From: Sminthopsis crassicaudata | Lineage: Eukaryota | DNA length: 64,000 nt | Direction of reading: 5' to 3' | NCBI RefSeq assembly: GCF_048593235.1 | Contig: NC_133620.1 | Location: 291,167,765 to 291,231,764, forward strand | In this document: positions 13,485-37,354 of the stretch, piece after piece | Layout: the number at the start of each line of letters is the position of its first letter | Position numbering within the stretch: position 1 is the first letter of the stretch | Position numbers and translations under genes: made by a program | Notes under the pieces: model-generated | What the model was told of the DNA's origin: nothing | Database searches by the model: none | What the model saw: only the letters and a program-made list of their open reading frames with translations

Positions 13485-13576
13485 CCCCCATCATCCCCCT
13501 CCCCCCCAAGCAGTTACCACTCAAATTCATTTGGGGAAAAAGGGGCAAAGAGTTCAGACTTCTGTAACTACTTCAA

Positions 13577-13723
13577 GCTGGGGGTGTGAAACTGTGTTCC
13601 CTTTGGGGACGGGGGAGACTCAAACTATGAGGAAAACCTGTGCTTCTGCCACCTATGCCTGGGCATCTACATGTATTGATAGGATGGGCTCCTTCACTTG
13701 CCTCTGTCCCCCAGGTCTCATAG
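13577..13723 (+). pseudogene. NOTCH4: NOTCH4 exon 6 remnant (EGF)
   Basis: ...EEN[frameshift]CASATYAWASTCIDRMGSFTCLCPPGLI|GT vs NOTCH4 [34 protein letters not shown]. Large internal deletions. Confidence 0.9.
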
Positions 13724-14258
13724 GTACAAAGTTGAAGGGACATTGTGGGAGTAGGGAAGATGGAATTCAAAGATGTTAGAGAACAAGTAAGATATTTGTA
13801 AAACCATTAGCACAATGTAGCACATAGTAGACATTTAACAAATGCTTTTTTCCTCCCTCCATCTCATTGTAAAGAGTCCTAGAAATATGAGGATATAGGG
13901 GAAGAAAGGAGATAAGAAAGGTACACTGCCTGGTACATAGTAGGTACCTAATGTTTATTGGTTGATAAAAGGACATTGGGATAACTCAGGAGGCAATGGT
14001 ATGGGCATGGGAACACATGAATATAAGGGCACTTGAATTAATGGAAAATTAATGTAAAGAGGATACAAAATAATTAAGTATTGACTTGTTTTGGGAAAGC
14101 AGTGGATGGAATGCTGGGCTGGAATCAGGAAGATCTGAGTCAAATCTGGCCTCAGACACTAGCTATGTAACCCTGGGCAAATCATTTAACCCCTTTTTGC
14201 CTCAGTTCCTCATCTGTAAAATGGGGACACACTGGAAAAGGAAATGAGAATTCATTCC

Positions 14259-14712
14259 TGTAATGTTCTGGTTGGTTTTCTAGAGGTCTTGGAGAAGCCT
14301 TTGTTTCAGCAGAGTAATCACCATGAGAATAGCCAGCGATAAAGTCTGAACTCTTTATTGCCTCCTTTAAAAAGTCAAGTTTCCTTGCCTGGGTCCTGGG
14401 CCAGCTTTTCTTTCAGATGGGACTTGGTTTCAGTGGCGAAATGAAGGAGACCCACCAGGACCCTGATCAAAGATGGAATGTCTCTCTGAGTCTGTGTCCG
14501 AGCCCTCTCGCAGTCTGTCTCCTTCGTAGTCTTGTTTCCTTGCCTGGGACTCAGGCTACCTTTCTTGGAGGCTTTCCTGAGGCTTGGTTTCAGTGGAGAA
14601 ATGAAGGAGGACAGGCCTGCCACCACAGTGGTGTGAGATGGAATGAATCTGTCTGGCTGAGTTTGTCCCAGCTTATATGCTCTATTCTAATTACATTATC
14701 TTAGGTGTGAAT
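14259..14712 (-). mobile_element. LTR-like repeat (antisense)
   Basis: Begins TGTAAT, with a reverse polyA signal (CTCTTTATT) near the start. Architecture resembles the other solo LTRs here; right end approximate. Confidence 0.45.
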
Positions 14713-15734
14713 CTTGTGGAACTATATTAAGTACTAAGTGCATGTACTGAACTAGAGAACCATTAAGCACCATACTAAACTAGATAGCCATTGTCTTTTC
14801 AATTCCACCGAGCTAACACCTTGTAAGAATCCTTGTTTCAAGTACAGAATTCTGGCCCATCACACATTCCAATATCTTTACCAAGAAAATCTGTTAGACA
14901 AAGTCCATGGCATCACACAGAGCTAGAAATCACTGAACAACAACAAAAGTTTGGGAAGGAGGGCACTCACAGCTAATGAGGATCCTTTTGGATCATGCAG
15001 AAGGTGATACTAGAGTTATATATTCTGAAGGCAAAGAGAAATTCTCTTAGGCAGAGTTAAGAATTACATTCTAGGCAAGAGCTGCAGCCAGTGCAAAAAT
15101 ATGGATGGGATGATGGAGTGATACATGTGAGGAACAAAAAGAAAGCCAGTTTGACTAGACTAAAACATGCAGGAAGAGGAATAATATCCAGTGAATCTAG
15201 AAACACAGGTTGTGGGCAGGTTGTGTAGGGTTCTAAAAGCTAAACAGAAAGAAAAGCTAATTAGGAAAGTCCTATGTCAAATGTACATTTAAGGAAAAAT
15301 CTCTTTGGCAGCAATGTGTAAGTTAGACAAGAATGAGAAATCAGGACAGGGAGAACAATGAGGAAATTGTCATAGTAATAGAAGCAAGAGGCAATAAGGA
15401 AGGGCCAGAGGTGAAGATTTGAGAAAAACAAGTTCATAAACGCAAGAGATTGGAAGAATAGTGATTTTTTTTTCAACAGAAACAGAAAAATTGGGAAGAA
15501 AGATAAATTATGGGGAAAAGATAATGAGTTACACAAGGATCACAGGAAGATCACAAGAAAGAAGTGGAAAGATAGGCGAATATAAAAGCAGAAGACTGGG
15601 GGAGGAATAGGAAAAGAAAAAAGAAAAATAGGGAGTGACAAGGAGTAAGCAGGGAGATTCAGAAACCTCTAGAGAGAATATAAGGTAACATAGGGACCAC
15701 AATCTATTCTCTCTCTCTCTCCTCCCCACTCTAG

Positions 15735-15889
15735 GTCTTCTGTGCAGCTATAGGATATGTGCCTGAGTCGGCTCTGCCACCCCAAAGCCCAACATAGTAC
15801 CAACACCATCTCAGGAGTCATACTTTGTCTATGCCAGACTGACTACTCCGGGCCCACCTGCCATCAGGATCTGGATGAATGTCAGATGG
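15735..15889 (+). pseudogene. NOTCH4: NOTCH4 exon 7 remnant (EGF)
   Basis: AG/GT bounded, 155 nt. LLC[1-nt deletion]QL*DMCLSRLCHPKAQHSTNTISGVILCLCQTDYSGPTCHQDLDECQM; TAG at 15751-15753. Confidence 0.95.
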
Positions 15890-16889
15890 GTGAGAAACCT
15901 CAGTATTCAGTTCTGCCCCATAACGTATATGCCAACATCATTATTAAAAAACTCAGACAAGTCATGAGAGGCCCAAAGGAAATCTTATATAAAATCTGGA
16001 GATAGAAAAAAAAGGTAACAACTTTGCCAGCTCAGTAAAATTCTCTTGAAAGAAGTTGAAATTGAATTATACTTTAAAAGATGAGTAGCAATTCAACAGA
16101 TGGAGAAAGAAAAGGAAGGCATTCCAGACCTAGGGAAGTTTTTTGAAGAAGGCATGGAGGTGGGAAAGTACAAAATGAGCTATCTGGGGAACAGCAAGCA
16201 GCTGAGCCAAGGTGGAGCATCAACTATGTGGGAGGAAATACAAGGCAGGAAGAAACAGACTCCAGTGCCAGACTAAGGACTCTGAGCTTTATTAGGCAAT
16301 AAAAAAGCCACTGAAAAACACAGCCACCACCTAATTCTGGCCTTTATCATCTTCTCTCTAGAAACTGTAGTAACCTCCTAATTGGTCTCTGCCTCAAATC
16401 TTCCTCCCACACATATTTCCAATATATTTTCTACCCAACTGCCAAAATGATTTTTCTTTATTGTGTAACATGCTATTTATTCCCTTACTCAATAAACTTG
16501 ACTTCCTAATTACCTCTAGGATCAAGTATCAATTCTCTGTTAGTATTTTCAGAATCTCATAAGTAAGTTCCAAGCTACCTTTCCAAGCTTATTCCACTCC
16601 ATCTTCTTCACACAACATACAGTCTGGACGATCTTACCTTCTTAACTAAGTCTCTCTTACTTGCAATAGCATCACACCTGATCCTCCAGGGGTCAAAGTA
16701 GACTGTTTTTTCTAGAAAATTCCCTGCATAAATTTGAGTAGGATACAAAGTAGACCTTTAAGATCCCTGAAAAAGGTCCCAACAAGCAAGCACAGTTAGA
16801 AATTGAGAATTTCCCAATGTTCTAGTGACTGCTGAAAAGGGAATAGCAAAGATGTGGACCAAAGATACAAATTCTTAATTACCTATCTG

Positions 16890-17189
16890 TGTAAGAGTCC
16901 TTTTATGAGACAAGCCCAGTGCAAACAGGAGATTTGAGTGGCCTGGAAGTAATTTCTGTGGCTAGGGACTGCCAGTAATGGGAGACGGCTCCCTCGCTGA
17001 TTGGCTGCATAGGACCTCACAGACCCTTTTTAAGCCCACTGCAGCAGGAGGTCGCTCTCTTTCCTGGGTCTCTCACAGACCAGGTGTTCAATTGGGAGTT
17101 AACAGGTCAGGGCGTTATGTGAGCAAGTATAATAAAGACTTTAAGTTTGCACCCTGTCGAATATGGTTGCATAGTCTTCTCACTATACA
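16890..17189 (+). mobile_element. solo LTR-like element
   Basis: TGTAAG...TACA termini, with GATTGG box, TTTAAG TATA-like element and AATAAA (~17131) in LTR order. Confidence 0.5.
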
Positions 17190-17447
17190 GAAACTGAACT
17201 AAATCCATAACTGAATAGAAAGGGAACTGAGCTAGATCCAGTATTGAGTCAGAAGATGAAATTAGTGTTGTTCTCAATTTTCAATTCCTTCACCTATCGC
17301 TTCTGTTCTTTGTGCCTCTGTTACTCTAGGCTAGTATTTTAGGCCATCACACAAATCACCAAACCTGTGCTAAAACATTTAGGATGGCAATGATATGACT
17401 AAGAAGTTAGGATATAACTAAGGTAGGTGTTGGGAGCCTCAATCTCT

Positions 17448-18218
17448 TTATTTTTTTAATTTAATTTTTGCAATTAAATTTAATTTAAAAATAAAATTTT
17501 ATGCATAGGTAATTTTTCAGCATTGACAATTGCAAAACCTTGTGTTTCAACTTTTCCCCTCCTGCCCCCCACCCCTTCCCCAAGATGGCAGGTTGACCAA
17601 TACACGTTCAATATGTTAAAGTATAAGTTAAATACAATATATGTATACATATCCAAACAGTTATTTTGCTCTACAAAAAAAAAAATCAGACTTTGAAATA
17701 GTGTACAACTAGCCTGTGAAGGAAATCCAAAATGCAGGCGGACAAAATTAGAGGGATTGGGATTCTATGTAGTGATTCATAGTCATCTCCCGGAGTTCTT
17801 TCGCTGGGTGTAGCTGGTTCAATTCATTACTGCTCTATTGGAACTGATTTGGTTCATCTCATTGTTGAACAGGGCCTTGTTCATCAGAATTGATCATCAT
17901 ACAGTACTGTTGTTGAAGTATATAATGATCTCCTGGGCCTGCTCATTTCACTCATCATCAGTTCATGTAAGTCTCTCCAGGCCTTTCTGAAATCATCCTG
18001 TTGGTCAATTCTTACAGAACAATAATATTCCATAACATTCATATACTATTATTTACCCAACCATTCTCCAATTTATGGGCATCCACTCAGTTTCCAGTTT
18101 CTGGCCACTACAAAGAGGACTGCCACAAACATTCTTACACATGCAGGTCCCTTTCCCTTCTTTAAAATCTCTTTGGGATTTTAGTAGTAGTAGTAACGTA
18201 GTAGTAGTAGTAGTAGTC

Positions 18219-18266
<48 letters not shown>

Positions 18267-18518
18267 ACACTGCTGGATCAAAGGGTATGCACAGTTTGAT
18301 AACTCTTTGAGCATAATTCCAAATTGCTCTCTAGAATGGCTGAATGTATGCACAATTCAACAATAATGTATCAGTGTCCCAATTTTCCCACATCCCCTCC
18401 AACATTCTGCATTATCTTTCCCTGTCATTCTAGCTAATCTGACAGGTGTGTAGTGGTATCTGAGTTGTCTTAATTTGCATTTCTCTGATTAATAATGACT
18501 TGGAGCATCTTTTCATAT
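17448..18518 (-). mobile_element. 5'-truncated LINE-1 (3' end)
   Basis: Reverse complement of the same ORF2 C-terminus/3'UTR family as 7722-8812. TSD GGGAGCCTCAATCTCT (17432-17447) / GGGAGCTGCAATCTCT (18519-18534). Confidence 0.93.
18183..18266. repeat. (TAG)n microsatellite inside L1
   Basis: Near-pure AGT/TAG trinucleotide run with two interruptions. Confidence 0.97.
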
Positions 18519-19335
18519 GGGAGCTGCAATCTCTAAGCTGATTGGCAAAGCCCAGCACTCATGCAGGAACATTTCCTTCTATGATTCTCATTAGTGGACT
18601 ACTATTTCCTATATTATTTATAATTGGCTTGATTGTAGCACTAAAACATTATCTAAAAAAATCTGGTGACAAGGGGAATTTGGGCAAGTTAACTAGAAAT
18701 GATTCCACATGCATATTCTGTCCTAATAAAACTAATCTCTCACTGAGACAAATGATAAAGGGGAGAACACCATGGAAAGCATTGTCACTATCAGAGAGAA
18801 TCCAAAGATCAAAAAAATAATAGTGTTTACCAACTTAGACTCAGAAAAGATCAGTAACCAAAAGATGGTTAAAGTATAACTAAGAATTCCCCTAAATGCC
18901 TATGTACACAGTTCCAAGTCAGGGAAATAGAGGAATCAAACAATCCATAGAATTGATAAAAAAGACATAACAAAATTCACTGACATTTAACCTTGTATAT
19001 CATTTGCCTTTCATTATTGGCTTCGAATAATGTAATCAATAATTCACACTTAACCAAAAAAAACTTACTCAAATATTAAATGTCAAATATAGTAACACAT
19101 AAAGGTCAATAATTCACATATCTGAAGACTATGTTGACCTAAAGAAAAATATATAATCATGATATAGTATAAAATAAAGCCTAAACGAGCCTGAGAGAAG
19201 TAGGAGCATCACTTCCATCTCAAACCACCCCACAACTCCTGTTTTCCTTTGACACCGACCCTATTCCTCCCACTCAACCCCCTGGACCCCCTGCAGAGGC
19301 TGGACCTCTGCAGGTAGGCAACCAACTGTTATTTT

Positions 19336-19479
19336 TTTTTCCTCCCCTGAGGCTAGGGTTAAGTGACTTGCCCAGGGTCACACAACTTGGAAGTGTTAAG
19401 TGTCTGAGATCACATTTGAACTCGGGTCCTCCTGAATTCAAGGCTGGTGCTCTATCCACTGTGCCACCTAGCTGCCCCC
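19336..19479 (-). mobile_element. WSINE1-like SINE
   Basis: Full antisense SINE with poly-T. TSD CCA(A/G)CTGTTATTTT on both sides. Confidence 0.92.
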
Positions 19480-19585
19480 ATCCAGCTGTTATTTTAATAC
19501 AGAAGTTGAGGAGGGTATATTCTTACTTATTATGGCTGGCTATTTTTTGTCTATTAGTTGATTTAGTTCATAATTTTAACAACTT

Positions 19586-19667
19586 GGGGGCAGCTAGGTG
19601 GCGCAGTGGATAGAGTACCAGCCTTCAATTCAGGAGGACCCGAGTTCAAATGTGATCTCAGACACTT
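19586..19667 (+). mobile_element. WSINE1-like SINE 5' part running into a gap
   Basis: GGGGGCAGCTAGGTGGCGCAGTGGATAGAG...GAGTTCAAAT, then N. Confidence 0.9.
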
Positions 19668-19806
19668 NNNNNNNNNNNNNNNNNNNNNNNNNNNNNNNNN
19701 NNNNNNNNNNNNNNNNNNNNNNNNNNNNNNNNNNNNNNNNNNNNNNNNNNNNNNNNNNNNNNNNNNNNNNNNNNNNNNNNNNNNNNNNNNNNNNNNNNNN
19801 NNNNNN
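19668..19806. other. assembly gap (139 N)
   Basis: Run of N. Confidence 1.
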
Positions 19807-19809
19807 TTC

Positions 19810-22218: not shown

Positions 22219-22435
22219 AGTATACCACATGGGTTTTGAAATTAGGGTTACATAATCAATTTTATTTTCAGATCCCCATTCTCTCCCTCCCACTCATGCT
22301 CTACCCTCCATTGAGAAAGCAAGAAACACAAAATCCCTGTTCTTAAGAGTTTGGCAGAGGGAAAGAGGGATGAAGGTCCCAAGTGAACCAAATTGGAGGG
22401 GATGCATGAACTCATTTGATTTACTCAACCTGTAG

Positions 22436-22549
22436 ATTTTGAGGGACAGCTCTGTGAGGTGGACACAGATGAATGTGCATCAGAGCCCTGCCAGCACTAG
22501 GGCATCTCCCATGATCAACAGAGCAGTTTCTTGTGTATCTGCCTTCCTG
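22436..22549 (+). pseudogene. NOTCH4: NOTCH4 exon 9 remnant (EGF)
   Basis: 114 nt, AG/GT. FEGQLCEVDTDECASEPCQH*GISHDQQSSFLCICLP; TAG at 22498-22500. Confidence 0.95.
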
Positions 22550-22714
22550 GTGAGTTTCTCATACCTGTACTATCACTACCACCACCCATGCCCTAAATGC
22601 CCTAAATACTCCTTACTCTGGAACTCCAGCCTCCTTCACTCTGAACTCCCTATTACCACATAACCTCAACACCTGCCTCCCTATAAAACAATCCCCACTT
22701 CCTCAAACCCCTTC

Positions 22715-23203: not shown

Positions 23204-23538
23204 AATCTCCCATCCCACCACTGACCACAAGTTGCCCTATACACAAGTTGTCTGTCTGTTTACTTAACTCTTATGCCCCCAATATTTATTTCTATCTTCT
23301 AACTACCTCCTCCGTGTCTTCTAGATTTCATTGTCTCTTCCTCCTCCTTTACCTCTATACCCTTTCTGCCTGAATCTCCTCTTTAGCCCTTATCCAGAAG
23401 CCCTTATCTTTTCCTCCAGCTTCTTTAGTTGTCCCTTCTATATTTTTGTTCCCAACATATTCCCAGAACATCTACATTCCTTGGGAAACTCTCCCAGATA
23501 CACCTTTTTAACTTTATCCCTTCCCACATTTACACTAG

Positions 23539-23658
23539 GTTTTACTGCCCCCCCCCCCTATTGTGAGGAGTATGTAGATGAGTATGCCAGTTTTCTATGT
23601 GCTCATGGTGGAATGTGCCAAGACCAGCTTGGGGCCTTTCATTGCCAACGTCCTTCAG
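23539..23658 (+). pseudogene. NOTCH4: NOTCH4 exon 10 remnant (EGF)
   Basis: AG/GT, 120 nt (C-run expanded by 6). FTAPPPPYCEEYVDEYASFLCAHGGMCQDQLGAFHCQRPS; two conserved Cys lost. Confidence 0.93.
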
Positions 23659-23787
23659 GTGAGAACTAGAGTAGGAGAGGAAGGGACAGAGCAGCAGGAT
23701 GCCTTAAAATTGTATGGGGCGGAAGAAGTTGTACATTTCAAAAGGTTTCAAATTTCAACTGCCTCCTTTTTTTCCCCACATATACAG

Positions 23788-23895
23788 GATTTGAAAGTTT
23801 TCAATGTCAGGTAGAAATAAATGAATGTCTTAGTGACCCCTGACTCTTAGGATCTAGCTGTCTTGATTTCCCTGGCTCCTTTTCCTGCCTCCCCA
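23788..23895 (+). pseudogene. NOTCH4: NOTCH4 exon 11 remnant (EGF)
   Basis: GFESFQCQVEINECLSDP*LLGSSCLDFPGSFSCL vs GFEGPRCQTEVDECLSDPCPVGASCLDLPGAFFCL. TGA at 23841-23843; 3' end and donor lost. Confidence 0.92.
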
Positions 23896-24187
23896 CACAC
23901 ACACAAATGTTATAGATCAGCAGGAAATTGGATTAAAAATAAAAGATACTTGAATTATATTGAGGATTAAAGGAGTGGGGGAAGACAAGAGAGACATTTT
24001 CAGAATGAGGTGAAAAGCACTGTGAGGTCAATATTAGTGTCAACTATTGTGCCCAGGATTCAGCTGGGAAAGACTGGGATTAGAGGACAAAGTTCTTGAG
24101 TGTATAGAGGCTAAGGGCCCCTTGATAGGTACATAGAAGATGACTCTGAAAGTCTGACTCTTCTGCCTTGTCTTTCATCTACCCTAA

Positions 24188-24338
24188 GACAAGTCTGTGA
24201 GTTCTTGTGCCCTCCCTCCTGTGGATGCCCTCCAAAGTGGGGATGGCAAACAGAAAACCACTGTCTCTACCCTGATGGAAACCCCAACTGTTCCCCTACC
24301 AAAGGCAACTGAATCTGTAAATATGGACAGTGCCAAAA
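24188..24338 (+). pseudogene. NOTCH4: NOTCH4 exon 12 remnant (EGF)
   Basis: GQVCEFLCPPSCGCPPKWGWQTENHCLYPDGNPNCSPTKGN*ICKYGQCQ vs GQLCEVPLC...ANCLCPDGSPGCAPPEDNCTCHHGHCQ. TGA at 24310-24312; acceptor reads AA, donor reads GC. Confidence 0.85.
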
Positions 24339-25126
24339 GCAATATCTCCCCACATTCCACTTCTAAACATTCCCTTTCATTGGGATTAGGAAGGAAACAA
24401 GGGAACATGGGCAATAGTGGGACAATTAGCAAATGGTCAACAGTGAGAGAACAGATGGTAGTGATTCCAGTAAAAAGTGAGATTCCCAATGTTCAGAGAT
24501 TTTCAGTTCTTTGAATAATCTTTCAGATTATTTGAAGTTCATAATCGGGTCACCCTTCAATTTTCATTATTAGATGCATCACTCAGAGAGAGAAAAGCCT
24601 TTGCCTCCAAGCTACACCCCCCCCATATCTCTACCTTGCCACCATTTGCACCTACAAATGTGGACGATGCTGAGAACCACAGACCTGGAAGGGACCGCAG
24701 AAGTCATCTAGTTGTACTCACTTTACTGATAAGGAAATTGAAGCTTAGCAATGTTAAGTGACTTGCCCAAGGTCCATAAATATTAACTGTCTGAGGCAAG
24801 ATTTGAACTCTGTTCTTCTGATTCCAAGCCCAGTAATCTATTCATTACCCCATGCTGCCTCTACCATAAGGAGGAAAGATCTTTTGGGTCAGAGCTGATG
24901 GTGGAAGAGATCTTTAGTTCTAGTCAATGGAAAAAAAAAACCAGTTATTTTGTTGAGAATATTTTGAAAAGGGAAAGTCAACTAAGAATTGAAATCAATA
25001 ACAAAGTCAATGGAAATAATCGGTCAGCAGCAAGGAGAGAAGGAAAGTCGGGTGGGGGTCGAATTGAAATGATTGATTTTCTCATACATATGTGTCCAAT
25101 ATACACACTTCTCCAGCCTCACCTAG

Positions 25127-25250
25127 AGCTACATGTGTGTGTGATGTGAGGAGGAGTTGGGAGGCTGTGTTTCAGAGCCTTGTGCCCATGGGAATACATG
25201 CCATTCCTGGTCTCATGGTTACAACTGCACCTACCCCAGTAGATACACAG
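25127..25250 (+). pseudogene. NOTCH4: NOTCH4 exon 13 remnant (EGF)
   Basis: ATCVCDV[22-nt frameshifting deletion]EELGGCVSEPCAHGNTCHSWSHGYNCTYPSRYT; AG/GT bounded. Confidence 0.95.
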
Positions 25251-25440
25251 GTGAGAACTCTTTTGACAACCTAAGGTCAAATTTTGGAGTGGGAAAAGAA
25301 AGGAAGGAAGGGAAGGGAAGACCTATAGGAATGGAGAAATAAAGAGGAATGGAAGGAAGATAAAAGAGGGGACATACTAGAAAGGAAGAAAAGGCAAAGA
25401 AACAAGTCTTCTGGGTTAGGCTTTTGGCTATTTATCTTAG

Positions 25441-25576
25441 GCTCTACCTGTCCTGAGGACCAGGCCATGTCTTACCAGTGGCTCCTGCAGCCCTACCCCT
25501 GAAGATAACTTCTGCATCTGCCTTCCTAATTATACTATATTCTATTGTCAGATCAGCATGGACCAGTGAACATCTG
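25441..25576 (+). pseudogene. NOTCH4: NOTCH4 exon 14 remnant (EGF)
   Basis: STCPED[17-nt deletion]RPCLTSGSCSPTPEDNFCICLPNYTIFYCQISMDQ*TS; TGA at 25567-25569. Confidence 0.92.
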
Positions 25577-25702
25577 GTGAGAGACTATTGTAGGCTAGGT
25601 ACTGAGCCAGTAGCATTGGCTGAGTTCAACTTGTCTAAGTACAATTAAGTAATGATTTATGTTGAATGGAATAAGAGACACTGTTCTAAACTTCTAAACT
25701 AA

Positions 25703-25853
25703 ACTCCCTAGATTTCTGTGCTCCAGATCCCTGTATTAGCCTACTGCTCCCAGCCTGACTCCTCCTTCCAATGTATTTGCCCTGGGGGCTAGACAGGTCC
25801 TCTCAGTGAACTGCCCCTCTTTCTCTCTCTGCTAAGTGGATGCCCTGAACCAA
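25703..25853 (+). pseudogene. NOTCH4: NOTCH4 exon 17 remnant (EGF); exons 15-16 absent from the 126-nt gap before it
   Basis: DFCAPDPC[shift]YCSQPDSSFQCICPGG*TGPLSELPL...DALNQ vs DLCAQKPC..HCLQTGPSFHCLCLQGWTGPLCNLPL...AALSQ. Trp to TAG at 25790-25792. Confidence 0.85.
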
Positions 25854-26880: not shown

Positions 26881-27365
26881 TCAGATCTTATAATTTTAAG
26901 TCTAGGACTCTCAGTACAACCCAGATAACCCAAAACAAGCCAACTAATAATAGTAATAACACAAAGCAATCACCATCAATATAGTTCAATCTTCGTGAAT
27001 ACACCTCAATCACTCCCAAGACAACATAACCATAGTCAACTACATTAAACTCAGAAGAAAATAGCCCCATACAATATAACTACATCCTATATTCTTGGAG
27101 TTATAGAAAATTTTTCATTTAATAGATACCATCTATCTCTCATAATCTTCAGGGAGGGGCAGGCAGATTGTGATTTTAATCTATTGCCTGCCAAGGTTTC
27201 CTAGGCTCAGAAAAATTCTCTGCTTAAACCAGGAATGTAAGAGAATGGTTATTTTCCCTTCTAGTTAAGTTTCTCACTGATTTTATCTAAACATTCCGTT
27301 GGGCAGATCCCTCCTCACTTCTTTTATGATATCCCTCCCCCCTTTTTTTTTCCACCTCTCCCTAG

Positions 27366-27548
27366 GCATAGATATCTCTTCCTTGTGTCAGAATGGAGGG
27401 CTCTGCATGGACGATAGGATGTTCCATTTCTGAAAGTGCCCACCTGGGTTCCAAGGCAGCTCATGCCAGGATAAAGTAAATGTATGTGAGTTGAGGCCCT
27501 GCCAGCGGGGCTACATGTTTGACGCGTCCCAATGGGTACTTCTGCCAG
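27366..27548 (+). pseudogene. NOTCH4: NOTCH4 exon 18 remnant (EGF)
   Basis: [45 protein letters not shown][2-nt deletion][17 protein letters not shown] at 27431-27433; donor reads ATGAG instead of GTGAG. Confidence 0.96.
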
Positions 27549-27653
27549 ATGAGAGGGGCTGAGGTACAAGAAAGATTCAGGGAGCTTAGAGGAGTGGGAA
27601 TACAGTCATATTGATGCAGTTCTAGTGGTAGAGAACTGAGGTGTGAGAATTGA

Positions 27654-28128: not shown

Positions 28129-28760
28129 TTCATCCCAGTCAATATAAGGAACAACAAAGAGATGTTTGATCTGGGAGAAGACCTTAAGTTACAGAGTTGG
28201 AATAGTTGAGTGTTGAAGAGGGGGACAAGGAAATATGTTACCTAAAGTTTAGTTGTATAAAACAGGCATGTGTTTGTATGTTTTGTCATTATAATAAGAT
28301 GAATGACTTAAGACTAAGTCTGGATCCCGAGTTGAAATTAATAGATGGTGATAAGTTATGTTGAGTGAACAGAAGAATAATTGAGTTGTGGGGATATATA
28401 GGTAAAAATTATTTTATTTTAGATCTGGAAAGATCCTCAAAGATCACCTTAGTCCAAGTCCTTTTAATCTATAAATAGAAACAGGCCAAGAAAGAATAAA
28501 AGGGAGTTGCTCAAGTTAACAGTAGAGCCAATATTATAATTCAAGACTCCTTGACTCAATTCTTAGTTTGGTGCCTTTTCCATACACTCATTTGTTAAAC
28601 TGTTTTTAATCACGAATAGCATTATTGTATTGAATTTTGTGAAATTGCATTGAGTTATGTCAAACTGCATTAAATTATATTTGGTTGTAGTGATTTGTGC
28701 TGGGCTAATCATAGATTCACATTCCCTACCTCAGCCTGAGCTACCCTCCTGACTCCACAG

Positions 28761-28980
28761 TGTGCCCCTGACTATCATGAACAGAACTGTTCAGAGGTGG
28801 ATGCTTGTCAGTCTCAACCCTGCCATAATCATGGCATCTGTCCTTCAGTCTCTGGTGGCTTCCAATGTTCCTCTCCCCCAGGCTTTGTGGGACTCCTTTG
28901 TGAGGGTGATGTGGATGAATGCCTGGACTAGCCTTGCTATCCTGCAGGCACTGTGGCCTGTCATTCTCTGGTCAATGGAT
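28761..28980 (+). pseudogene. NOTCH4: NOTCH4 exon 19 remnant (EGF)
   Basis: CAPDYHEQNCSEVDACQSQPCHNHGICPSVSGGFQCSSPPGFVGLLCEGDVDECLD*PCYPAGTVACHSLVNG. TAG at 28929-28931; 3' end and donor lost. Confidence 0.96.
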
Positions 28981-29612
28981 ATTGAGGGCAGAAGTCAAAG
29001 ACAGGGAGACTGGAGTATGGATATCTTTGAGATACAACTAAAGAGTAAGAGAGAGCACAGCTGTAGAGTACGGGCTAGCTCCCTGGAGGGCCTCAGGGTC
29101 AGCCAGAGTCAGGATAAATTAAAATCCTTGGTCTTTGGGGAGAGAAGTGAAAGATGCAGGTAAGCAGAATCCTGGATTTGGGAGTCCAGAGTCACCAACT
29201 TCTCTCCTCCTTGTCCTGTGGCCAAGTGCCTCTGCCTCCTTCCCTCAGCCCTCTAATCCTTGCCTATGATGAACACCAAGAGCAAGCACCCACAGTGAGA
29301 AGAGCCATTTTTCCAAACATGTGCTAATAGAGTCATTGTCTCACATTGAATAGGTAATTAGCCGTAAGTGCTTGGTTGTCTGATTCGAGCACACCTTTTT
29401 GGAGTTTCAGCCCTCTACACAAAGCAACATCTCCTTCCATCCATCCCAATCCACTGCTGGGCTTCCTTCCCCTACATTCCACAATCCTTCTCTTCTAGGG
29501 AAGGAGACTTTGCCCATACCTCTCATTTCCAGCAGTAAATAGAAGAGAAAAATTTAAAAAGAAGTGTATGAAACACTGATTCTACACACTGGGGGCCATC
29601 CTCACATTCCAG

Positions 29613-29700
29613 GTCATCAGTGTGAGAAGCTGGATGCTTCCATGGTGGGACCAATGAAGTTATTGTTGGAAATCACCTTGGCTTCATGTGTCACTGTCCC
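29613..29700 (+). pseudogene. NOTCH4: NOTCH4 exon 20 remnant, copy A (left inversion arm)
   Basis: HQCEKL[19-nt deletion]CFHGGTNEVIVGNHLGFMCHCP; truncated at 29700 with no donor. Confidence 0.92.
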
Positions 29701-29753
29701 TTACTTCTTTCTCCATTGCTTCAGAGTCATTTGAGGGTATCTCCTGCTCTTAC

Positions 29754-29979
29754 TTGAGTCCAATACTATCTTCACCCAGAGGGGGCTGACATCTACAGGA
29801 GGCAGGTTTCGTTTGTGGTCGAGGCCTCCTGCAGAAACCAGAGGCCAGCCACAGAGTACCATGTTCCCGATGCCTTCTCCGGATAAGTTGGAAGACCAGG
29901 AGGCTCCTCAGAACTAGGAGAATCATCCCAGCCATTGGGGAACAGAACACAGACCAGGGAAGCTGAAGTGCTGAGGGTG
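29754..29979 (-). pseudogene. NOTCH4: NOTCH4 exon 24 (TM plus start of RAM), inverted
   Basis: AG/GT intact, open frame PSALQLPWSVFCSPMAGMILLVLRSLLVFQLIRRRHREHGTLWLASGFCRRPRPQTKPASCRCQPPLGEDSIGLK, on the strand opposite to exons 6-20A. Confidence 0.97.
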
Positions 29980-30336
29980 CTGGGGAACAGAAATGAAGTC
30001 TGAATCAGATAAAGATCCAGGAAGGCATACATGAAACAAATGTATCTTTTTAAGGAAGCTGTATGTAATACAGAGTGTCTAAACAGATAAACAGAGAAAT
30101 CGGGGTTAGTGGGAGGGGCAGAGAATCAGGGAGGGAGAAGAATCTCTCTACTGGCTATTCTGAGATTGTAGTCATTTTATTCCTTCTTGTGTAGGCATGA
30201 GTAAAATGATGTTCAACAGGTAGTTCTGGGAAAGGTGATAGATGAGTGTGGGATAAGATGGTTGAGAATCTGTGACTGGTCTAAGATGGAGGGAAAATTC
30301 AAGAGAAAATTAAAAGCTGAGGGTGATGGCATCTAC

Positions 30337-30472
30337 ATGTGCCTTCTTGCGGATAGGCAACTATCAGGGGCCCAACAGCAGCCATTGCAGCTAGGAAGTA
30401 GAGCAGAAAGCCTGGGGGGCAGGAGGGGCAGAATCACAGCAGGATGAATCTATCCCCAGCACCACCATAGAT
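30337..30472 (-). pseudogene. NOTCH4: NOTCH4 exon 23 remnant (HD-C), inverted
   Basis: SMVVLGIDSSCC...PGFLLYFLAAMAAVGPLIVAYPQEGT vs FVVVMGVDLSRC...PGLLLRFLAAMAAVG...PLLAVHPHAGT; internal deletions. Confidence 0.9.
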
Positions 30473-30560
30473 CTGTATGAGTGGAACCATAAACCCTTAA
30501 TTATTTGGGCACTGGTTAGTTGTCCCCTTCCCTAGCCTACTTTTTCTTAATCTTCCTTAC

Positions 30561-30720
30561 CCAGAAGAGAAGGTGTCAGTCTCTTTGCTGAACAGGTGTG
30601 TGTGGGGTACTGTTCTTTCATGTTGTGGTTGTTCCTATTTCTGTGAAGCTCTTCTTCCGTTTGTGGTCCAGGGTAAGGGTATACTATCTCTCTGCCTTTT
30701 TGGTCCCCTGAGGCCAGGAC
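30561..30720 (-). pseudogene. NOTCH4: NOTCH4 exon 22, 3' half (HD-N end), inverted; LNR-C part deleted
   Basis: GREIVYPYPGPQTEEEL...[shift]SKETDTFSSG|GTAAG vs GRDMVYPYPGARAEEKL...GKETDSLSAG. Confidence 0.88.
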
Positions 30721-30768
30721 CTGGGTTTGGCTGTTATGTTACCCTTTCTCTCCCCCAGTGTTCCTCAT

Positions 30769-31296
30769 GAGCAAATTTGGGGTGTCTCACAATTGCAGCC
30801 ATCAAACAGACACTCCTAAGTGTTGCACTGTGGGTGACATTGCCCATCTCTGAAGGGGAACCAGCATCAAGCATGGAGAGGACAGCCCTTCCGGGGATCT
30901 GTGATCCCCAGGGAATAATCTCCCCTATCCCAGGCACCATCGGGACTACTGCAGTCAGGATGACTGGCCCCATCTCCATATCGGCCTTTATATTCCTCTG
31001 CCTCTGATGTTTGGCATCAGGGTCCCAGGAACCCAGGGGGGCAGGAACAGTAGAAACTAGAGCTACAGGGTCCTTTTCTCCATGGGACTCTATGTAGCTG
31101 CCATCGTGTAGGCAAGGGGAAAGAGATCTACAACCCCGAGTGACTGGAGGAAGCAGGCAATCAGGACCCCCATAGCCTTTGAGGCAAACACAGTAAGGGA
31201 TAGATCCTGGATGGGAAAAAGATAGACAGAAGCCCCGTGATGGCAGTGGGGGGAGATACAGGAAGGGACATCATGGAGGCATGTGGGACCTTCAAA
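30769..31296 (-). pseudogene. NOTCH4: NOTCH4 exon 21 remnant (last EGFs plus LNR A/B), inverted
   Basis: FEGPTCLHDVPSCISPHCHHG[1-nt deletion]FCL..CLKGYGGPDCL..GP*CQ..GDGASHPDCSSPDGAWDRGDYSLGITDPRKGCPLHA*CWFPFRDGQCHPQCNT*ECLFDGCNCETP. Stops at 31017-31019, 30867-30869 and 30816-30818; acceptor and donor both lost. Confidence 0.96.
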
Positions 31297-31343
31297 GGGG
31301 GGGGGGGGAGTTAAGACTAAGGACTCTGGATAGCTCATTCTCT

Positions 31344-32330: not shown

Positions 32331-33451
32331 TGGACAGCTCATTCTCTATGGAACCTTTTTTTGTTTTTTTAGGGCTTGATAAATTGTTTTATTGACTATG
32401 TAAATGTAAAATAGGGATATAGAAAAATGCAAATAATACATATTAAACTTTAAAATTCATTTTGTGTATAATTTGTTTGAGAATTGGTTATTAAACATTT
32501 ACCAGCACACCCCTGACATATTTACAAAGCATATGCATGGGTAATTTTTCCAACATTGACCCTTGCAAAATCTGTTGTCTATAGAACTTTTTTCTACTTC
32601 CAAGGCAATACTTGTGATCAACTCACATTTTTATGGTACTCTTTTAAACACTAACCTTGTAAGGTGAGAGGTAGGGAAGGTTTTATTATGTTCACTTTAC
32701 TGAGAAAACTGAAGCTTAGGAGGTCATGTGACTTGCTTACTGTCGTCACACTGTATTGGTATCAGGATTTAAGCCTATTGGAATTTGTCTCCTTGCCCCG
32801 TGATTTTTCTGATGCATCATACAGCAACAATGTCAAGAGTTAGAAGGGACCTAAAGGTCACCTGACCAACTTCCTTATTTTATAGATAAAGAAGGCAAGC
32901 AGATAAGATGTGTAATATATGTAATATAGATAGTATGTACTATAGATAAAGAAGTGTAGCAGATAAGATACTGGACTCAGGCACCAGCTATATATGGTCG
33001 AGTTTCAACTTCAGTACAGTGGAGGTAGTTAATAATACTTGCTTCACAGAGCAGTTTTGAGGATCGAATGAGATAATATATGAAAGTGCTTTGTAAAGCT
33101 TAAAGTGATACATAAATGTTCATTATTATTGGTTGCAGAGCTGAGACAAGAACCCAGACTTTGTCACATAGCTTTACTGAGCCCACATTCTAATTATCAC
33201 CATTCACTTGTTCTTGATGTCCTGACGCCTCCACATTTTAGGCATATATGTTATATGTATACACATCTATGATACTGACTCCTGAACGCTCTCGCACAAG
33301 TCCTTCCCTGAGGATCTCCTCTTGTGCCTCTTTCTGGTAGTCCCCTCCTCCTGTAATTATGACCCTGATCTCCTTGGTTTTTTACTTTTTTTTTTTTTTT
33401 TTTAGTAGAAGTGACCAAGGTAGACTGTGGGATGAATGGGATTTGACTCGC

Positions 33452-33561
33452 CACGGGGCAGTGACACATGAAGCCAAGGTGATTTCCAACAATAACTTCA
33501 TTGGTCCCACTATGGAAGCAGGGCTGAATCTTGCAAGCACCCGGCTTCTCACACCGATGAC
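33452..33561 (-). pseudogene. NOTCH4: NOTCH4 exon 20 remnant, copy B (right inversion arm)
   Basis: AG-bounded, HRCEKPGACKIQPCFHSGTNEVIVGNHLGFMCHCPV, GC donor. Inverted near-duplicate of 29519-29700. Confidence 0.95.
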
Positions 33562-33689
33562 CTGGGAATGTGAGGATGGCCCCCCCGTGTGCAGAATCAG
33601 TGTTTCATACACTTCTTTCTTTACTTTTCTCTTCTATTTACTGCTGGAAATGAGAGGACCACAACCATAACACTCTTACTCTTTTATTG

Positions 33690-34100
33690 TTGTTCGCTTG
33701 CATTTTTTTTTTTACTCGTTTACTTTCCTTTTTGATCTGATTTTTCTTGCGCAGCAAGAGAGTTGTATATGTCTACACATATTGGATTTAACATATATTT
33801 TAGCATATACAACATATATTGGGGTTGCTTGCTATCTAGGGGAGGGGGTGGGGAAAGGAGGGGAAAATCTGAAACACAAGGCTCAATGTTGAAAAATTAT
33901 CCGAGGGGCAGCTAGGTGGCGCAGTGGATAGAGCACCAGCCCTGAATTCAGCAGGACCTGAGTTCAAATCTAATCTCAGACACTTAGCACTTCCTAGCTG
34001 TGTGACCCTGGGCAAGTCACTTAACCCCAGCCTCAGAGGGAAAAAAAAGAAGAAATTATCCGAGTACACGTTTTTGAAAATAAAAAGCTTTAATAATAAT
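33690..34100 (+). mobile_element. older L1 3'UTR fragment interrupted by a SINE
   Basis: GCTATCTAGGGGAGGGGGTGGG...AATGTTGAAAAATTATCC marsupial L1 3' end. Confidence 0.7.
33906..34052 (+). mobile_element. WSINE1-like SINE
   Basis: Full SINE. TSD AAATTATCCGAG at 33894-33905 and 34053-34064. Confidence 0.93.
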
Positions 34101-35324
34101 AAATAATAATTACAAAAAGTAAATTACAAGGCATTTTGAGGGGGGAGCAATCTTCTCGAAGGAAACAACTTTAACCAAGCCTTAAAAGAAGCTACAGGCA
34201 GAAGCAAAGAGGAAATCCAGGACGAACAGTCTGAAGAAAGGCCCAGACACAGGATACGGATTATCATATTTGGGGAGATTGTAGGAGAGCTTGTCTAGAA
34301 CAATAGCACATTAAAGAAAATAATATGAAATAAGTCGGGAAAGGCAGGATGGAGAAAATCTGTAGAAAGTTTGAACTATTAGGCTGAGAACAATTCTAGT
34401 CATTGGTTCAACGATTCCCTAAACAATTTTCGATAATTTAAATTATCCCTTCTAATTTCCATTTTAAAATTGGCTTAGAATCAGGGTACATTGCGCCCAT
34501 TCCTTTTCCTGCACCTCCACAATCTTCCACCACCCCGCATTTCTTATTTAATTTTATCTTTGCTTTTCCTATTTTTAAGGTATTAATAACTGTTATTTTC
34601 AGTCACCTTAACTACGATAAGATATCTATCATAAAAGGGTCATCAGTCACAGAAATTATCAGTAGCAAAGGTATTTTTCAGAACAGGGCTGTAACTGACA
34701 CAGACTGAACAAGGACGCCTTGTTCCTGTCACAGTCTCCATCACGATGATTCCGTGGATCCCAAGGGCGTCTTTCATTGCTCCGGGAGCCAGGGAGCGGG
34801 CGCGCGGGATGGTCCGGCCTCAGAGAGCGGGTCTGGTAACACCCGGACCGACTCTCCCTGCGCCGGATCCAGTACTGCGCTCCACCCAAGGTCCGTTTCG
34901 GTTGGATGGTGAGGGTGAAATCAGCCAGAGCGGGGAGGAAGTGCAGGCTCGGATAAGGGATAATTAAGGCAGCCAGACGTCAGCGTCAGGCTTTCCCTAA
35001 GGGAAAGGTGAATCCGGGGAGCAGACAGTCTGCCAGTCCCATCAGCGGGGAAAGCAGTGGGAAGGGAAGCAGGGGAAAGGGAGGGGGGGTGATGGAGAGG
35101 AGGGGGGTCCCTATCTCCCCGGCCACAAAACAAAGCCCCATTGTCTCCGAAGATCTGCACCCGTGCCATCTCCACGGCAAAGCTTCCCGCTCCTGACCAG
35201 CAGAGGGCGCCCCAAGCCAGCTCTAGCTGTCCCCCTAGCCCAGTCCTGAGAGAAACTTCTCGCAGACAGCTACCCCCAGGGACTCGAACCCGCCTCCGGA
35301 ACCCTCCCTTTGCCTCCCTGCCTG

Positions 35325-35393
35325 GCGGTGAGCAGTGCTCCGCCGCCAATGCCCTCTCCAGGTACGGGCAGACGAGGGCGCTCAGGACCGCAG
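35325..35393 (+). pseudogene. NOTCH4: NOTCH4 exon 29 remnant (ANK)
   Basis: AVSSA[-1]AANAL[-1]QVRADEGAQDR vs AVNNARAARSLLQAGADKDAQDNR. Confidence 0.75.
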
Positions 35394-35407
35394 TCAGACA
35401 GGGCCAA

Positions 35408-35528
35408 GTCTCTTTTTTTTGAGGCTGGGGTTAAGTGACTTGCCCAGGGTCACACAGCTAGGAAGTGTTATGTGTCTTGAGGCTGGATTTGAACTCAGGT
35501 CCTCCTGAATTCAGCACTGCACCACGTA
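35408..35528 (-). mobile_element. WSINE1-like SINE with internal deletion (NOTCH4 intron 29)
   Basis: Poly-T, then GAGGCTGGGGTTAAGTGACTTGCCCAGGGTCACACAGCTAGG...GATTTGAACTC. Confidence 0.88.
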
Positions 35529-35787
35529 GGGTGACGTCTCTTAAAGAGGGGGCAAAGTCCAAAGGGCGGCTGAAAAGGGGAAGGGGAGGAAGAGGCGGAA
35601 TGGGGAGGAGGAGGAGGAGGAGGAAGAAAAGGGAAAGGAAAAAGAAAGAAGGGAGAGGAGGGGGCAGAGAAAAAAAAGTCAGAGAGGAGGAAAACTGGGC
35701 GGAGTCAACACGTGACGTGGGGAGACGGAACGTCTAGGAGGACTCGCGCCTCCTGGGAGTGCCCTGCCCCCCCTCCACTCTACGCAG

Positions 35788-35908
35788 CTCTTCCGGACTG
35801 CCCGAGAAGGGGCAGTGGAAGTAGCTCGGGTGCTGCAGGACCAGGCCCCAAGACGCTGCTGGTCAGCGAGGACACGGGGGCCTGCTGACGCTCCTGGAAG
35901 AGGAAGGG
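35788..35908 (+). pseudogene. NOTCH4: NOTCH4 exon 30 remnant (last ANK repeats); weak similarity continues to ~36300
   Basis: LFRTAREGAVEVARVLQDQA[shift]DAAGQRGHGGLLTLLEEEG vs LFLAAREGAVEVAQLL...LRDQAGLAPADVAHQRNHWDLLTLLEGAG. Confidence 0.88.
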
Positions 35909-37354
35909 CTTCCAGAGTCCGGCCCTCTTTGCGTCACAAAGCCTCTCAGGATGGTGACAGGACCCGGAAAGCGCCTTCCGGCTCTCTAGGACGTTACTTG
36001 AGGGCGGGGCTTTTCTATGCGGCCGTATGACGTCGGAGGAAGAAATAGAAGCTTCCCCTCCCGGCCGAACAATGTCAGCGAATGTGACTCGGCATTGGGG
36101 CGCGGCCTGTCTTTGTAGCGGGAGCCTCTCCGGAGGCGGAGATTCCCCCCCTACGCGGCCTGAGGTGCCCAGCTAGCATGCGCGAAGCTCGACCCTGTCC
36201 TAGGTTACTACTGGATCGGCCCTGCGAACGACGAAAGTGAACTACAGTCACCCGGTCTTATGATTGGATCCCCAGAACTCCGGATCCCTCCCTCTTTTGA
36301 ACAAAGTTCCTCTATCCTCCTGTGTACCCAAACCTCGGAGTGATGCGCTAGGCTAAGCCGAGAAAGTACTGGGGATAAGGTGGGGGTGGGTAGGGATCTG
36401 ATGGATGCTGAAAGCAGCAGTCTGGGGACGACCCAAATTCTAGGCCATGAGGCTCTAGTGCAGGGAAACCCCCACAATGGAAATAGAGGGATGTGCCTGC
36501 ACCTAAAATAAGTGTTCACCCCCTTGACTGAACAATACTTTCCCTGAAATGGGAGAGAACCTCAGCTATGCCTTTCCTGCATTAAAATGGACACTGTATT
36601 ATCCTTCAAAGGGAGGGAGGGGGTGCGCAATACCATTATCACCATTGCCACCCCCCAAAAAAGATTAGGAGCCTGATGAGGAGCAAGGAGCAACAGAAAA
36701 AGGGACAAGCAAATCCCAAATACAGGGATGCTGGGAGACCCCAAAACTGGTGTGAGGATTGCCCCCAAAAGAAAGAAAAACAAGATATGAAATTGTTTTC
36801 CCTGTGCAGATGACTTCCCATGGGTGCCTGCCTCTGGAACAGTTCAAGTTTCTCCCCTTACCCTAGGATGAGATCACTTAAGGATGGAGCATCCAATCAT
36901 GTCCCCTCTATCCATAATGAACTAGATTCTGTTATCTCCTAATAAAGCTAAGTAGAGAAAGTGAGAGCGCATGACACATAATTGGAGTGGGACTTCTCAC
37001 ATGCTCCACCTCCCCTCCAAAAAAAGGAATGAATATTTCAAATGCTTGTAAAAAAAAAAAAAAAAACAACAAAACAACTTTGGGGTTCCCACAGAGAATC
37101 TGTCATTTATGGTCACAGCAATTAGATGTAAAACTTCTCAAACTATCTTCTTAACTCAATGGAGGAATCCAAATGCCACCTTATTCTTTGCTGACATTCC
37201 CTAATACAAATGCACAGTAGCCACTTAAATAACTAAAGGGCAGAAGTTAAGAAATTTGAAAAAAAAATTAGTATCTCTAAGGAGATGTCTACTGGTGGTC
37301 TGGCATTATAGTCATCTTGTTCAGGAATGAGAAACTACCTAATGCTTAGTAAAG

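What the first reader, a model, noticed from the sequence alone, without database searches (positions are those of the whole stretch)
13577..36300. NOTCH4 is a dead gene here: candidate lineage-specific loss of a Notch receptor in a marsupial
Seen: about 19 exon remnants translate to NOTCH4 EGF/LNR/HD/TM/ANK sequence in the syntenic position. They carry at least 11 in-frame stops (15751, 22498, 23841, 24310, 25567, 25790, 27431, 28929, 30816, 30867, 31017), frameshifts in exons 6, 7, 13, 14, 18, 20A, 21, 22 and 29, destroyed splice sites (e.g. donor AT at 27549), lost EGF cysteines and missing exons. The five neighbouring genes reconstruct with open frames, so assembly error cannot explain this. 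Established: NOTCH4 is one of four mammalian Notch receptors, is single-copy in MHC class III, and acts in endothelium and immune cells; mouse knockouts are viable. Inference: this is a unitary pseudogene, so this lineage may run on three Notch receptors. I do not know whether the loss has been published.
Basis: partly seen in the sequence, partly recalled or inferred. Interest (0 to 1): 0.95.

Follow-up and report, generated by a model that had tools for sequence, protein, structure and literature searches.

The report
Dead NOTCH4 gene in dasyurid marsupials
The fat-tailed dunnart carries only the wreck of NOTCH4 in its usual place beside GPSM3. Antechinus and the Tasmanian devil share some of the same damage, while opossum, wombat and bilby keep a full-length gene, so dasyurids lost one of the four mammalian Notch receptors in a common ancestor.

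Summary
The window is Sminthopsis crassicaudata (fat-tailed dunnart, GCA_048593235.1). About 20 exon remnants between 13,564 and 36,330 match NOTCH4 far better than NOTCH1-3 and lie directly upstream of an intact GPSM3.

Ten of the 11 listed stops are real in-frame stops. "15751" is only the tAG of a splice acceptor. I also confirmed frameshifts, a GT-to-AT donor, lost EGF/LNR cysteines and a ~4 kb inverted block. Residues 1-360 and 1531-1751 (RAM and most ANK repeats) are absent. The N gap lies in an intronic SINE and touches no lesion.

New here: loci anchored on GPSM3 show a called gene of 1,972-1,978 aa in this position in opossum, wombat and bilby. No gene is called there in dunnart, Antechinus or devil. 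All three dasyurids share an 11-nt and a 2-nt frameshifting deletion in the last exon and have lost its acceptor. The gene therefore died before crown Dasyuridae, after the split from bandicoots and bilbies.

The loss is partly published: Cheng et al. 2012 list a "NOTCH4 pseudogene" in a devil BAC table, at the orthologous spot.

Not excluded: an intact copy elsewhere in the genome.

The parts
13564..13725 (+). First detectable NOTCH4 remnant (EGF, aa 361-406 of donkey NOTCH4). Two EGF cysteines are replaced, and the devil has the same replacements.
   Evidence: tblastn; dunnart-devil alignment
15754..15897 (+). EGF exon remnant (aa 413-460), 69% identical. It has a Cys-to-His change shared with the devil. 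The TAG at 15751 is its acceptor, not a stop.
15914..15934 (.). Deletion junction. About 6 kb present in the devil (L008 2711-8791), including remnants for aa 445-524, is missing here.
   Evidence: blastn; tblastn
19668..19806 (.). Assembly gap inside an intronic SINE. No NOTCH4 remnant abuts it.
22429..22551 (+). EGF exon remnant (aa 521-561) with an in-frame stop at 22498.
23505..23891 (+). Two EGF exon remnants (aa 554-633) with an in-frame stop at 23841.
24169..24339 (+). EGF exon remnant (aa 634-692), 39% identical, with an in-frame stop at 24310.
25145..25819 (+). Three EGF remnants: aa 706-743, aa 752-788 and aa 872-901. Stops at 25567 and 25790. About 80 residues between them are deleted.
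27356..27550 (+). EGF exon remnant (aa 909-973). It has a stop at 27431, a 2-nt deletion near 27508 and a donor GT changed to AT at 27549. The devil orthologue is open from an internal ATG onward and serves as the first coding exon of annotated GPSM3 isoforms.
28758..28982 (+). Best-kept EGF exon remnant (aa 973-1048, 71% identical) with a stop at 28929. It is the only piece that still passes the Pfam EGF cut-off.
29519..29700 (+). Left arm of the inverted duplication: end of intron 19 plus a truncated copy of exon 20, carrying a 19-nt deletion.
29753..31329 (-). Inverted block holding EGF exon 21, LNR, heterodimerisation-domain (HD) pieces and the TM/RAM exon. Stops at 31017, 30867 and 30816. 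Frame changes, LNR cysteines lost, and about 80 residues (aa 1271-1349) missing.
   Evidence: the wombat intron plus TM exon aligns to the minus strand here
33437..33657 (-). Right arm of the inverted duplication, with the fuller copy of exon 20 (aa 1068-1100).
33658..34113 (.). Place where the RAM and ANK exons (aa 1531-1751; wombat L006 604-3522) should lie. They are deleted, and a SINE sits here.
35325..35393 (+). Remnant of the penultimate (ANK) exon. The acceptor and 5' part are deleted, and there are two 1-nt deletions.
35782..36330 (+). Remnant of the last exon (last ANK repeat and C-terminal tail). The acceptor AG is deleted. The 11-nt deletion after 36046 and the 2-nt deletion after 36313 are shared with Antechinus and the devil. 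Many further private indels and stops.
40639..41900 (+). Intact GPSM3, the downstream neighbour used as the anchor for orthology.

Best explanation
This is the orthologous NOTCH4 locus of the fat-tailed dunnart, now a unitary pseudogene.

Shown: the gene was already broken in the common ancestor of Sminthopsis, Antechinus and Sarcophilus. Each lineage has since decayed on its own, through stops, frameshifts and kilobase deletions. In the dunnart there is also a ~4 kb inversion with a short inverted duplication.

Inferred: no Notch4 receptor can be made. The signal peptide, the first nine or so EGF repeats and the promoter region are absent. The negative regulatory region is riddled with stops. 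The RAM domain and most ANK repeats, which are needed for CSL-dependent signalling, are deleted. Dasyurids therefore run on NOTCH1-3.

Inferred: the CpG-rich 3' end survives because it serves the neighbouring GPSM3, not NOTCH4.
For: - Identity as NOTCH4: the TM/RAM piece is 71% identical to donkey NOTCH4 and matches Notch1 only weakly. Over all remnants the score is 1,074 bits for NOTCH4 against about 600 for NOTCH1-3.
- Orthology: the order is remnants, then GPSM3, PBX2, AGER. In opossum, wombat and bilby a called gene of 1,975, 1,978 and 1,972 aa ends about 3 kb upstream of GPSM3. Those species have clean ANK exons and last-exon ORFs of 207-222 aa.
- Lesions: see the observation check.
- Shared ancestry of the loss: an 11-nt, a 3-nt and a 2-nt deletion lie at identical columns of the last exon in all three dasyurids. 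The last-exon acceptor is lost in all three. A SINE sits just after the penultimate exon in all three. EGF cysteine losses are shared by dunnart and devil.
- Neutral decay: exon remnants are 93-96% identical between dunnart and devil, against 90.5-93% for flanking DNA. The two lineages have non-overlapping large deletions.
- No gene is called upstream of GPSM3 in three dasyurid assemblies.
- Independent literature: 'NOTCH4 pseudogene' in devil BAC FQ790241 at 84027-87750. Using the PBX2 offset, this equals L008 365-4088, which is the orthologue of window 13564 to about 16000.
- Two DNA samples of the species hold 64-89% of the sampled 31-mers of the stop-rich stretch 30760-31340.
Against: - No genome-wide search for a second, intact NOTCH4 could be run.
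The inversion rests on one assembly plus the outgroup orientation.
- The shared frameshifts lie in the poorly conserved C-terminal tail, so the first disabling event is not identified.
- The 5' exons may lie beyond the window's left end instead of being deleted. Against that, a VAMP4-like pseudogene sits about 10.5 kb upstream, at the same distance as the VAMP4-like gene in the devil BAC table.
- The intact status of the outgroup genes rests on annotated product lengths plus my check of only their last five to seven exons.
Confidence: 0.9

Rival explanations
1. This is a decayed duplicate. An intact, expressed NOTCH4 lies elsewhere in dasyurid genomes, and this copy was free to decay.
For: No whole-genome search was possible. 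The protein search also failed to list the opossum, wombat and bilby NOTCH4 proteins that do exist, so its silence on dasyurids means nothing.
Against: The dead copy occupies the ancestral position next to GPSM3, where the outgroups keep their called NOTCH4-sized gene. From general knowledge, NOTCH4 is single-copy in mammals. Four runs labelled RNA (guessed labels) hold none of the sampled words of the exon-rich stretch, but this says nothing about a diverged copy.
Confidence: 0.04
2. This is an assembly or consensus artefact. The gene is intact in the animal, and the lesions come from errors or misassembly.
For: The window has three gaps. The inversion is seen in a single assembly. No read-level check could be made.
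Against: There are ten stops, many indels and kilobase-scale absences, while GPSM3, PBX2 and AGER next door are called as full genes. Two other species' assemblies, plus a 2012 devil BAC, show the same locus dead, with identical deletions. Two separate DNA samples hold most of the 31-mers of the stop-rich stretch.
Confidence: 0.01
3. The locus is dead as a receptor but kept for another use: a transcribed non-coding locus, or a source of upstream promoters and first exons for GPSM3.
For: Annotated devil GPSM3 isoforms (P0267, P0270, P0259) start at an ATG inside a NOTCH4 EGF exon remnant and splice into GPSM3. The CpG island over the dead last exons keeps an observed/expected CpG ratio of 0.62, against 0.12 in the rest of the pseudogene. 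The ratio is similar in the devil (0.61) and somewhat lower in Antechinus (0.47). Eutherian read-through NOTCH4-GPSM3 models exist.
Against: In the dunnart the same exon has a stop, a frameshift and a dead donor, so the devil usage is not conserved. Remnants diverge about as fast as the flanks. The devil isoforms are computational models.
Confidence: 0.25

Closest known systems
'NOTCH4 pseudogene' annotated in the Tasmanian devil MHC BAC C12G5 (FQ790241; Cheng et al. 2012, BMC Genomics 13:87, PMC3414760)
   Same: It is the same locus in a sister dasyurid. Using the PBX2 offset, the BAC coordinates 84027-87750 fall on L008 365-4088, which holds the orthologues of the dunnart remnants at 13564-15897.
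   Different: That paper gives one table line with no lesion catalogue, no comparison with other marsupials and no dating. Here the species is the dunnart, the wreck is mapped over 23 kb, and shared lesions place the loss in the dasyurid ancestor.
Intact marsupial NOTCH4 (opossum, wombat, bilby gene models of 1,975, 1,978 and 1,972 aa)
   Same: Same position and orientation upstream of GPSM3. The last two exons align base for base.
   Different: Those genes have open ANK and tail exons with intact splice sites. The dunnart copy lacks most ANK repeats and is interrupted throughout.
Unitary pseudogenes, meaning lineage-specific losses of otherwise conserved single-copy genes; and mouse Notch4 knock-outs, which are viable (both from general knowledge, not tested here)
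   Same: Orthologous position, disabling mutations, function retained in outgroups, and a gene whose loss is tolerated.
   Different: This is a natural loss, fixed in a whole mammalian family, of one of the four Notch receptors. I found no discussion of it in the searchable literature.

Membership tests
NOTCH4 orthologue (by descent) | Closer to NOTCH4 than to NOTCH1, NOTCH2 or NOTCH3 | tested here: met
   The summed best scores over 19 remnants are 1,074-1,075 bits for eutherian NOTCH4 and 872 for platypus NOTCH4, against 590-629 for NOTCH1-3, including opossum NOTCH1.
NOTCH4 orthologue (by descent) | Conserved synteny: immediately upstream of GPSM3-PBX2-AGER, on the same strand | tested here: met
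   Opossum, wombat and bilby have the same arrangement with a full-length gene.
NOTCH4 orthologue (by descent) | Notch domain order EGF repeats, LNR, HD, TM/RAM, ANK | tested here: inconclusive
   The remnants follow the protein order, except for the inverted block 29753-33657. ANK is reduced to its last repeat.
Functional Notch receptor | Uninterrupted open reading frame with usable splice sites | tested here: not met
   Ten in-frame stops, multiple frameshifts, and lost acceptors and a lost donor.
Functional Notch receptor | Signal peptide and N-terminal EGF repeats | tested here: not met
   There is no match to aa 1-360 anywhere in the window. They could in principle lie beyond the left end of the window.
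Functional Notch receptor | Intact LNR/HD negative regulatory region | tested here: not met
   The LNR exon has three stops and has lost cysteines. It scores 12.7 bits against the Pfam cut-off of 21.2. Residues 1271-1349 are missing.
Functional Notch receptor | RAM and ankyrin repeats for CSL binding | tested here: not met
   Residues 1531-1751 are absent. The matching wombat segment, L006 604-3522, has no counterpart in the dunnart.
Unitary pseudogene | Functional orthologue retained in outgroup lineages | tested here: met
   Gene models of 1,972-1,978 aa, with open 3' exons, in opossum, wombat and bilby. Platypus and turtle NOTCH4 proteins also exist.
Unitary pseudogene | Disabling lesions shared with related species | tested here: met
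   The 11-nt and 2-nt deletions and the acceptor loss in the last exon are shared by Sminthopsis, Antechinus and Sarcophilus.
Unitary pseudogene | No functional copy elsewhere in the genome | not testable with these tools
   No tool searches the whole dunnart genome. Notes of this scan mention no other Notch locus, but they cover little of the genome.

The most novel reading that the evidence does not exclude
The loss is ancestral to all Dasyuromorphia, so it includes the thylacine and the numbat. It began with a rearrangement at the MHC class II/III border that removed the NOTCH4 promoter and exons 1-6. The surviving 3' CpG island and at least one EGF exon were then taken over as an upstream promoter and first exon of GPSM3. 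On this reading dasyurids are natural, roughly 25-60-million-year-old NOTCH4 knock-outs, with possible compensation in NOTCH1 and DLL4.
Probability: 0.25. Interest if true: 0.6.

Novelty: new member of a known kind. Interest (0 to 1): 0.5.

Why it matters
Notch4 is one of four mammalian Notch receptors and acts mainly in endothelium and some immune cells. A whole marsupial family that has lacked it for tens of millions of years is a natural knock-out. It shows the receptor is dispensable in the wild and gives a setting to look for compensation in NOTCH1, DLL4 and JAG.

There are practical reasons too:
- The dunnart is a laboratory model marsupial and a reference for thylacine work.
- The devil is studied for transmissible cancers and MHC biology.
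- Annotators and experimenters should know that NOTCH4 is absent, and that some devil 'GPSM3' isoforms begin in its wreck.

The interest is limited. Mouse knock-outs are viable, the devil pseudogene was already listed in 2012, and gene loss of this kind is a familiar phenomenon.

Tried and rejected
The call still counted, so no read-level check of lesions, inversion breakpoints or other species was possible.
- A protein search with the TM/RAM fragment found nothing of similar length.
- Exact look-ups of five ATG-started ORFs from the remnants are not in the protein collection.
- Devil GPSM3 isoform X3 is not on record as a gene product. The longer isoform P0267 worked.
- The search with donkey NOTCH4 listed no marsupial NOTCH4. 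I first read this as a possible marsupial-wide loss. I rejected that once the GPSM3-anchored loci showed genes of about 1,975 aa in opossum, wombat and bilby.
- I first suspected the window was the devil, because the PBX2-to-AGPAT1 spacing is 19,099 against 19,239 nt. I rejected that because the window is 100% identical to the Sminthopsis crassicaudata assembly.
- Simple motif scans for EGF, LNR and ANK found little because the cysteines are degraded.
- The runs labelled 'RNA?' that hold about 50% of words, introns included, have guessed labels and cannot be taken as evidence of transcription.

Full report
**What the window is.** The 64 kb window has three N gaps (2635-2775, 19668-19806, 47506-47644). 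A locus fetched through the GPSM3 protein of Sminthopsis crassicaudata (L004; GCA_048593235.1, CM109184.1) is 100% identical to window 30639-47505 and 47645-51903. The window is therefore fat-tailed dunnart, a dasyurid marsupial. Downstream of the finding lie GPSM3 (40639-41900), PBX2 (Met at 43598), AGER and the start of AGPAT1 (62697), all on the + strand. The assembly's own gene calls give GPSM3 161 aa, PBX2 430 aa and AGER 489 aa, the last running over the end of the locus.

**Checking the observation.** I obtained real NOTCH4 proteins by searching with the best-kept piece, a TM/RAM-like frame at 29753-30004 on the minus strand. It matches Notch1 in the PDB and is 71% identical to donkey NOTCH4. 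Cluster members gave a full-length 2,021-aa protein, P0010. A tblastn of P0010, alpaca, platypus and turtle NOTCH4 against the window finds about 20 remnants, in protein order. Residues 361-1048 lie on the + strand from 13564 to 28982. Residues 1068-1530 lie on the minus strand from 33535 down to 29753. The last ANK repeat and the tail lie on the + strand at 35782-36330. A DNA-level trace of the penultimate exon is at 35325-35393.

The remnants cover roughly 45% of the protein. They score 1,074 bits against NOTCH4 and about 600 against NOTCH1-3. Only one piece still passes the Pfam EGF threshold, and the LNR piece falls below its cut-off.

**Lesions.** The eleventh, 15751, is the tAG that forms the splice acceptor of the exon starting at 15754. 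The devil has cAG there, so it is not a coding lesion.

I confirmed these further lesions:
- The donor GT changed to AT at 27549 and a 2-nt deletion near 27508.
- Frame changes within 31329-31055.
- A deleted acceptor and two 1-nt deletions in the penultimate exon.
- More than a dozen indels in the last exon.
- Lost EGF and LNR cysteines.

No trace of residues 1-360 or 1531-1751 exists in the window. Compared with the wombat, the segment carrying the RAM and ANK exons (L006 604-3522) has no dunnart counterpart.

**The assembly gap.** The left flank of the 19668-19806 gap is a SINE copy. Nothing NOTCH4-like lies between 16,000 and 22,400. The nearest remnants are kilobases away, so no lesion depends on reading across the gap. 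The exon for residues 461-520 is missing for another reason. About 6 kb that the devil retains, including remnants for residues 445-524, is absent at the dunnart junction 15914/15934. I did not try to infer the gap's letters.

**The inversion.** Arms at 29519-29700 and 33455-33657 are 92-97% complementary. Each holds the end of intron 19 and a copy of exon 20, and the left copy is truncated with a 19-nt deletion. Between the arms, the exons from 21 to the TM exon read on the minus strand. The wombat's intron plus TM exon, which in the wombat lie in the same orientation as GPSM3, align to the dunnart's minus strand. This confirms the orientation change relative to an outgroup.

**Is it lineage-specific?** Marsupial GPSM3 proteins served as anchors to fetch 10 kb upstream in six species.
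- In opossum, wombat and bilby a called gene of 1,975, 1,978 and 1,972 aa ends about 3 kb upstream of GPSM3. Their ANK exons align cleanly, and the last exon is an ORF of 207-222 aa.
- In dunnart, Antechinus flavipes and Tasmanian devil no gene is called there. tblastn finds only broken remnants.

**Shared lesions.** Alignment of the last exon shows an 11-nt, a 3-nt and a 2-nt deletion in all three dasyurids at identical columns. The acceptor AG is lost in all three: dunnart and Antechinus share the same 6-nt deletion, and a larger devil deletion overlaps it. A SINE sits just after the penultimate exon in all three. Dunnart and devil also share cysteine-destroying substitutions in two EGF exons.

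Most stops and frameshifts, by contrast, are private to one lineage. The devil lacks dunnart 21312-27006 and 28465-34372. Exon remnants are no more than slightly better conserved than the flanks (93-96% against 90.5-93%). This is the pattern expected for a gene that died before the three lineages split and then drifted. Using published divergence times from memory, that places the loss after the split from Peramelemorphia and before crown Dasyuridae, roughly 60 to 25 million years ago. This dating is an inference.

**Literature.** Cheng et al. 2012 (PMC3414760) list a 'NOTCH4 pseudogene' at 84027-87750 of devil BAC FQ790241, upstream of PBX2 at 108416. In my devil locus PBX2 starts at 24754. 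The BAC entry therefore maps to L008 365-4088, exactly where the first three devil remnants lie. These are the orthologues of dunnart 13564-15897. The devil pseudogene was thus recorded, but only as a table line. Searches for any discussion of NOTCH4 loss in marsupials, dasyurids or the dunnart found nothing further.

**What remains open.** I could not search the whole genome for a second NOTCH4. This is unlikely on synteny and copy-number grounds, but it is untested. Independent DNA samples of the species hold 64-89% of sampled 31-mers of the stop-rich stretch 30760-31340. That is support but not per-lesion proof. The first disabling mutation is not identified, because the shared frameshifts lie in the weakly conserved tail. 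A shared loss of the promoter and exons 1-6 is a good candidate. A VAMP4-like pseudogene sits about 10.5 kb upstream of the first remnant in the dunnart, matching the spacing of the 'VAMP4-like' gene in the devil BAC table. I did not see the devil sequence upstream of the first remnant.

**Verdict.** The finding sharpens to a Dasyuridae-wide, ancestral unitary pseudogene. It is a solid, moderately interesting gene loss, partly anticipated by a 2012 annotation.

Noticed in passing
L008 14510-14686 (devil); orthologue of window 27393-27566: Annotated devil GPSM3 isoforms (P0267, 238 aa; P0270; P0259) begin at an ATG inside a NOTCH4 EGF exon remnant and splice into GPSM3. In the dunnart the same exon has a stop, a 2-nt deletion and a dead donor, so this usage is not conserved.
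   Followed up: partly
window 34750-36250: The CpG island over the dead last two NOTCH4 exons keeps an observed/expected CpG ratio of 0.62, against 0.12 for the rest of the pseudogene. The ratio is 0.61 in the devil and 0.47 in Antechinus, against 0.51-0.67 in the intact outgroups. It is probably kept unmethylated as a regulatory element, perhaps an upstream GPSM3 promoter.
   Followed up: partly
window about 2900-3050, minus strand, next to the gap 2635-2775: A VAMP4-like sequence with in-frame stops sits about 10.5 kb upstream of the first NOTCH4 remnant. The spacing matches the 'VAMP4-like' gene in the devil BAC table.
   Followed up: no
window 15914-15934, 21312-27006 and 28465-34372, compared with L008: The two dasyurids have independent kilobase deletions. 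The dunnart lacks about 6 kb that the devil keeps. The devil lacks two dunnart blocks, including the whole inverted segment.
   Followed up: yes
window about 35400-35520; L005 about 4740-4870; L008 about 16900-16985: A SINE is inserted right after the donor of the penultimate NOTCH4 exon in all three dasyurids and is absent from wombat, opossum and bilby. It is a further shared derived marker.
   Followed up: partly
window 575-1300 and 7793-8404: LINE-1 ORF1-like and ORF2-like fragments fill much of the 13 kb upstream of the first remnant. No other gene is evident there.
   Followed up: no
proteins P0030, P0037, P0043, P0044 (eutherians): Several eutherian 'NOTCH4' models are read-through fusions that end in the full GPSM3 sequence. 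Transcription running from NOTCH4 into GPSM3 may therefore be an old feature of the locus.
   Followed up: no
runs X18 and X25-X33 (organisms B-G): Genomic runs of six other coded species hold 9-23% of the 31-mers of the stop-rich stretch 30760-31340. Close relatives therefore carry near-identical pseudo-exons.
   Followed up: no
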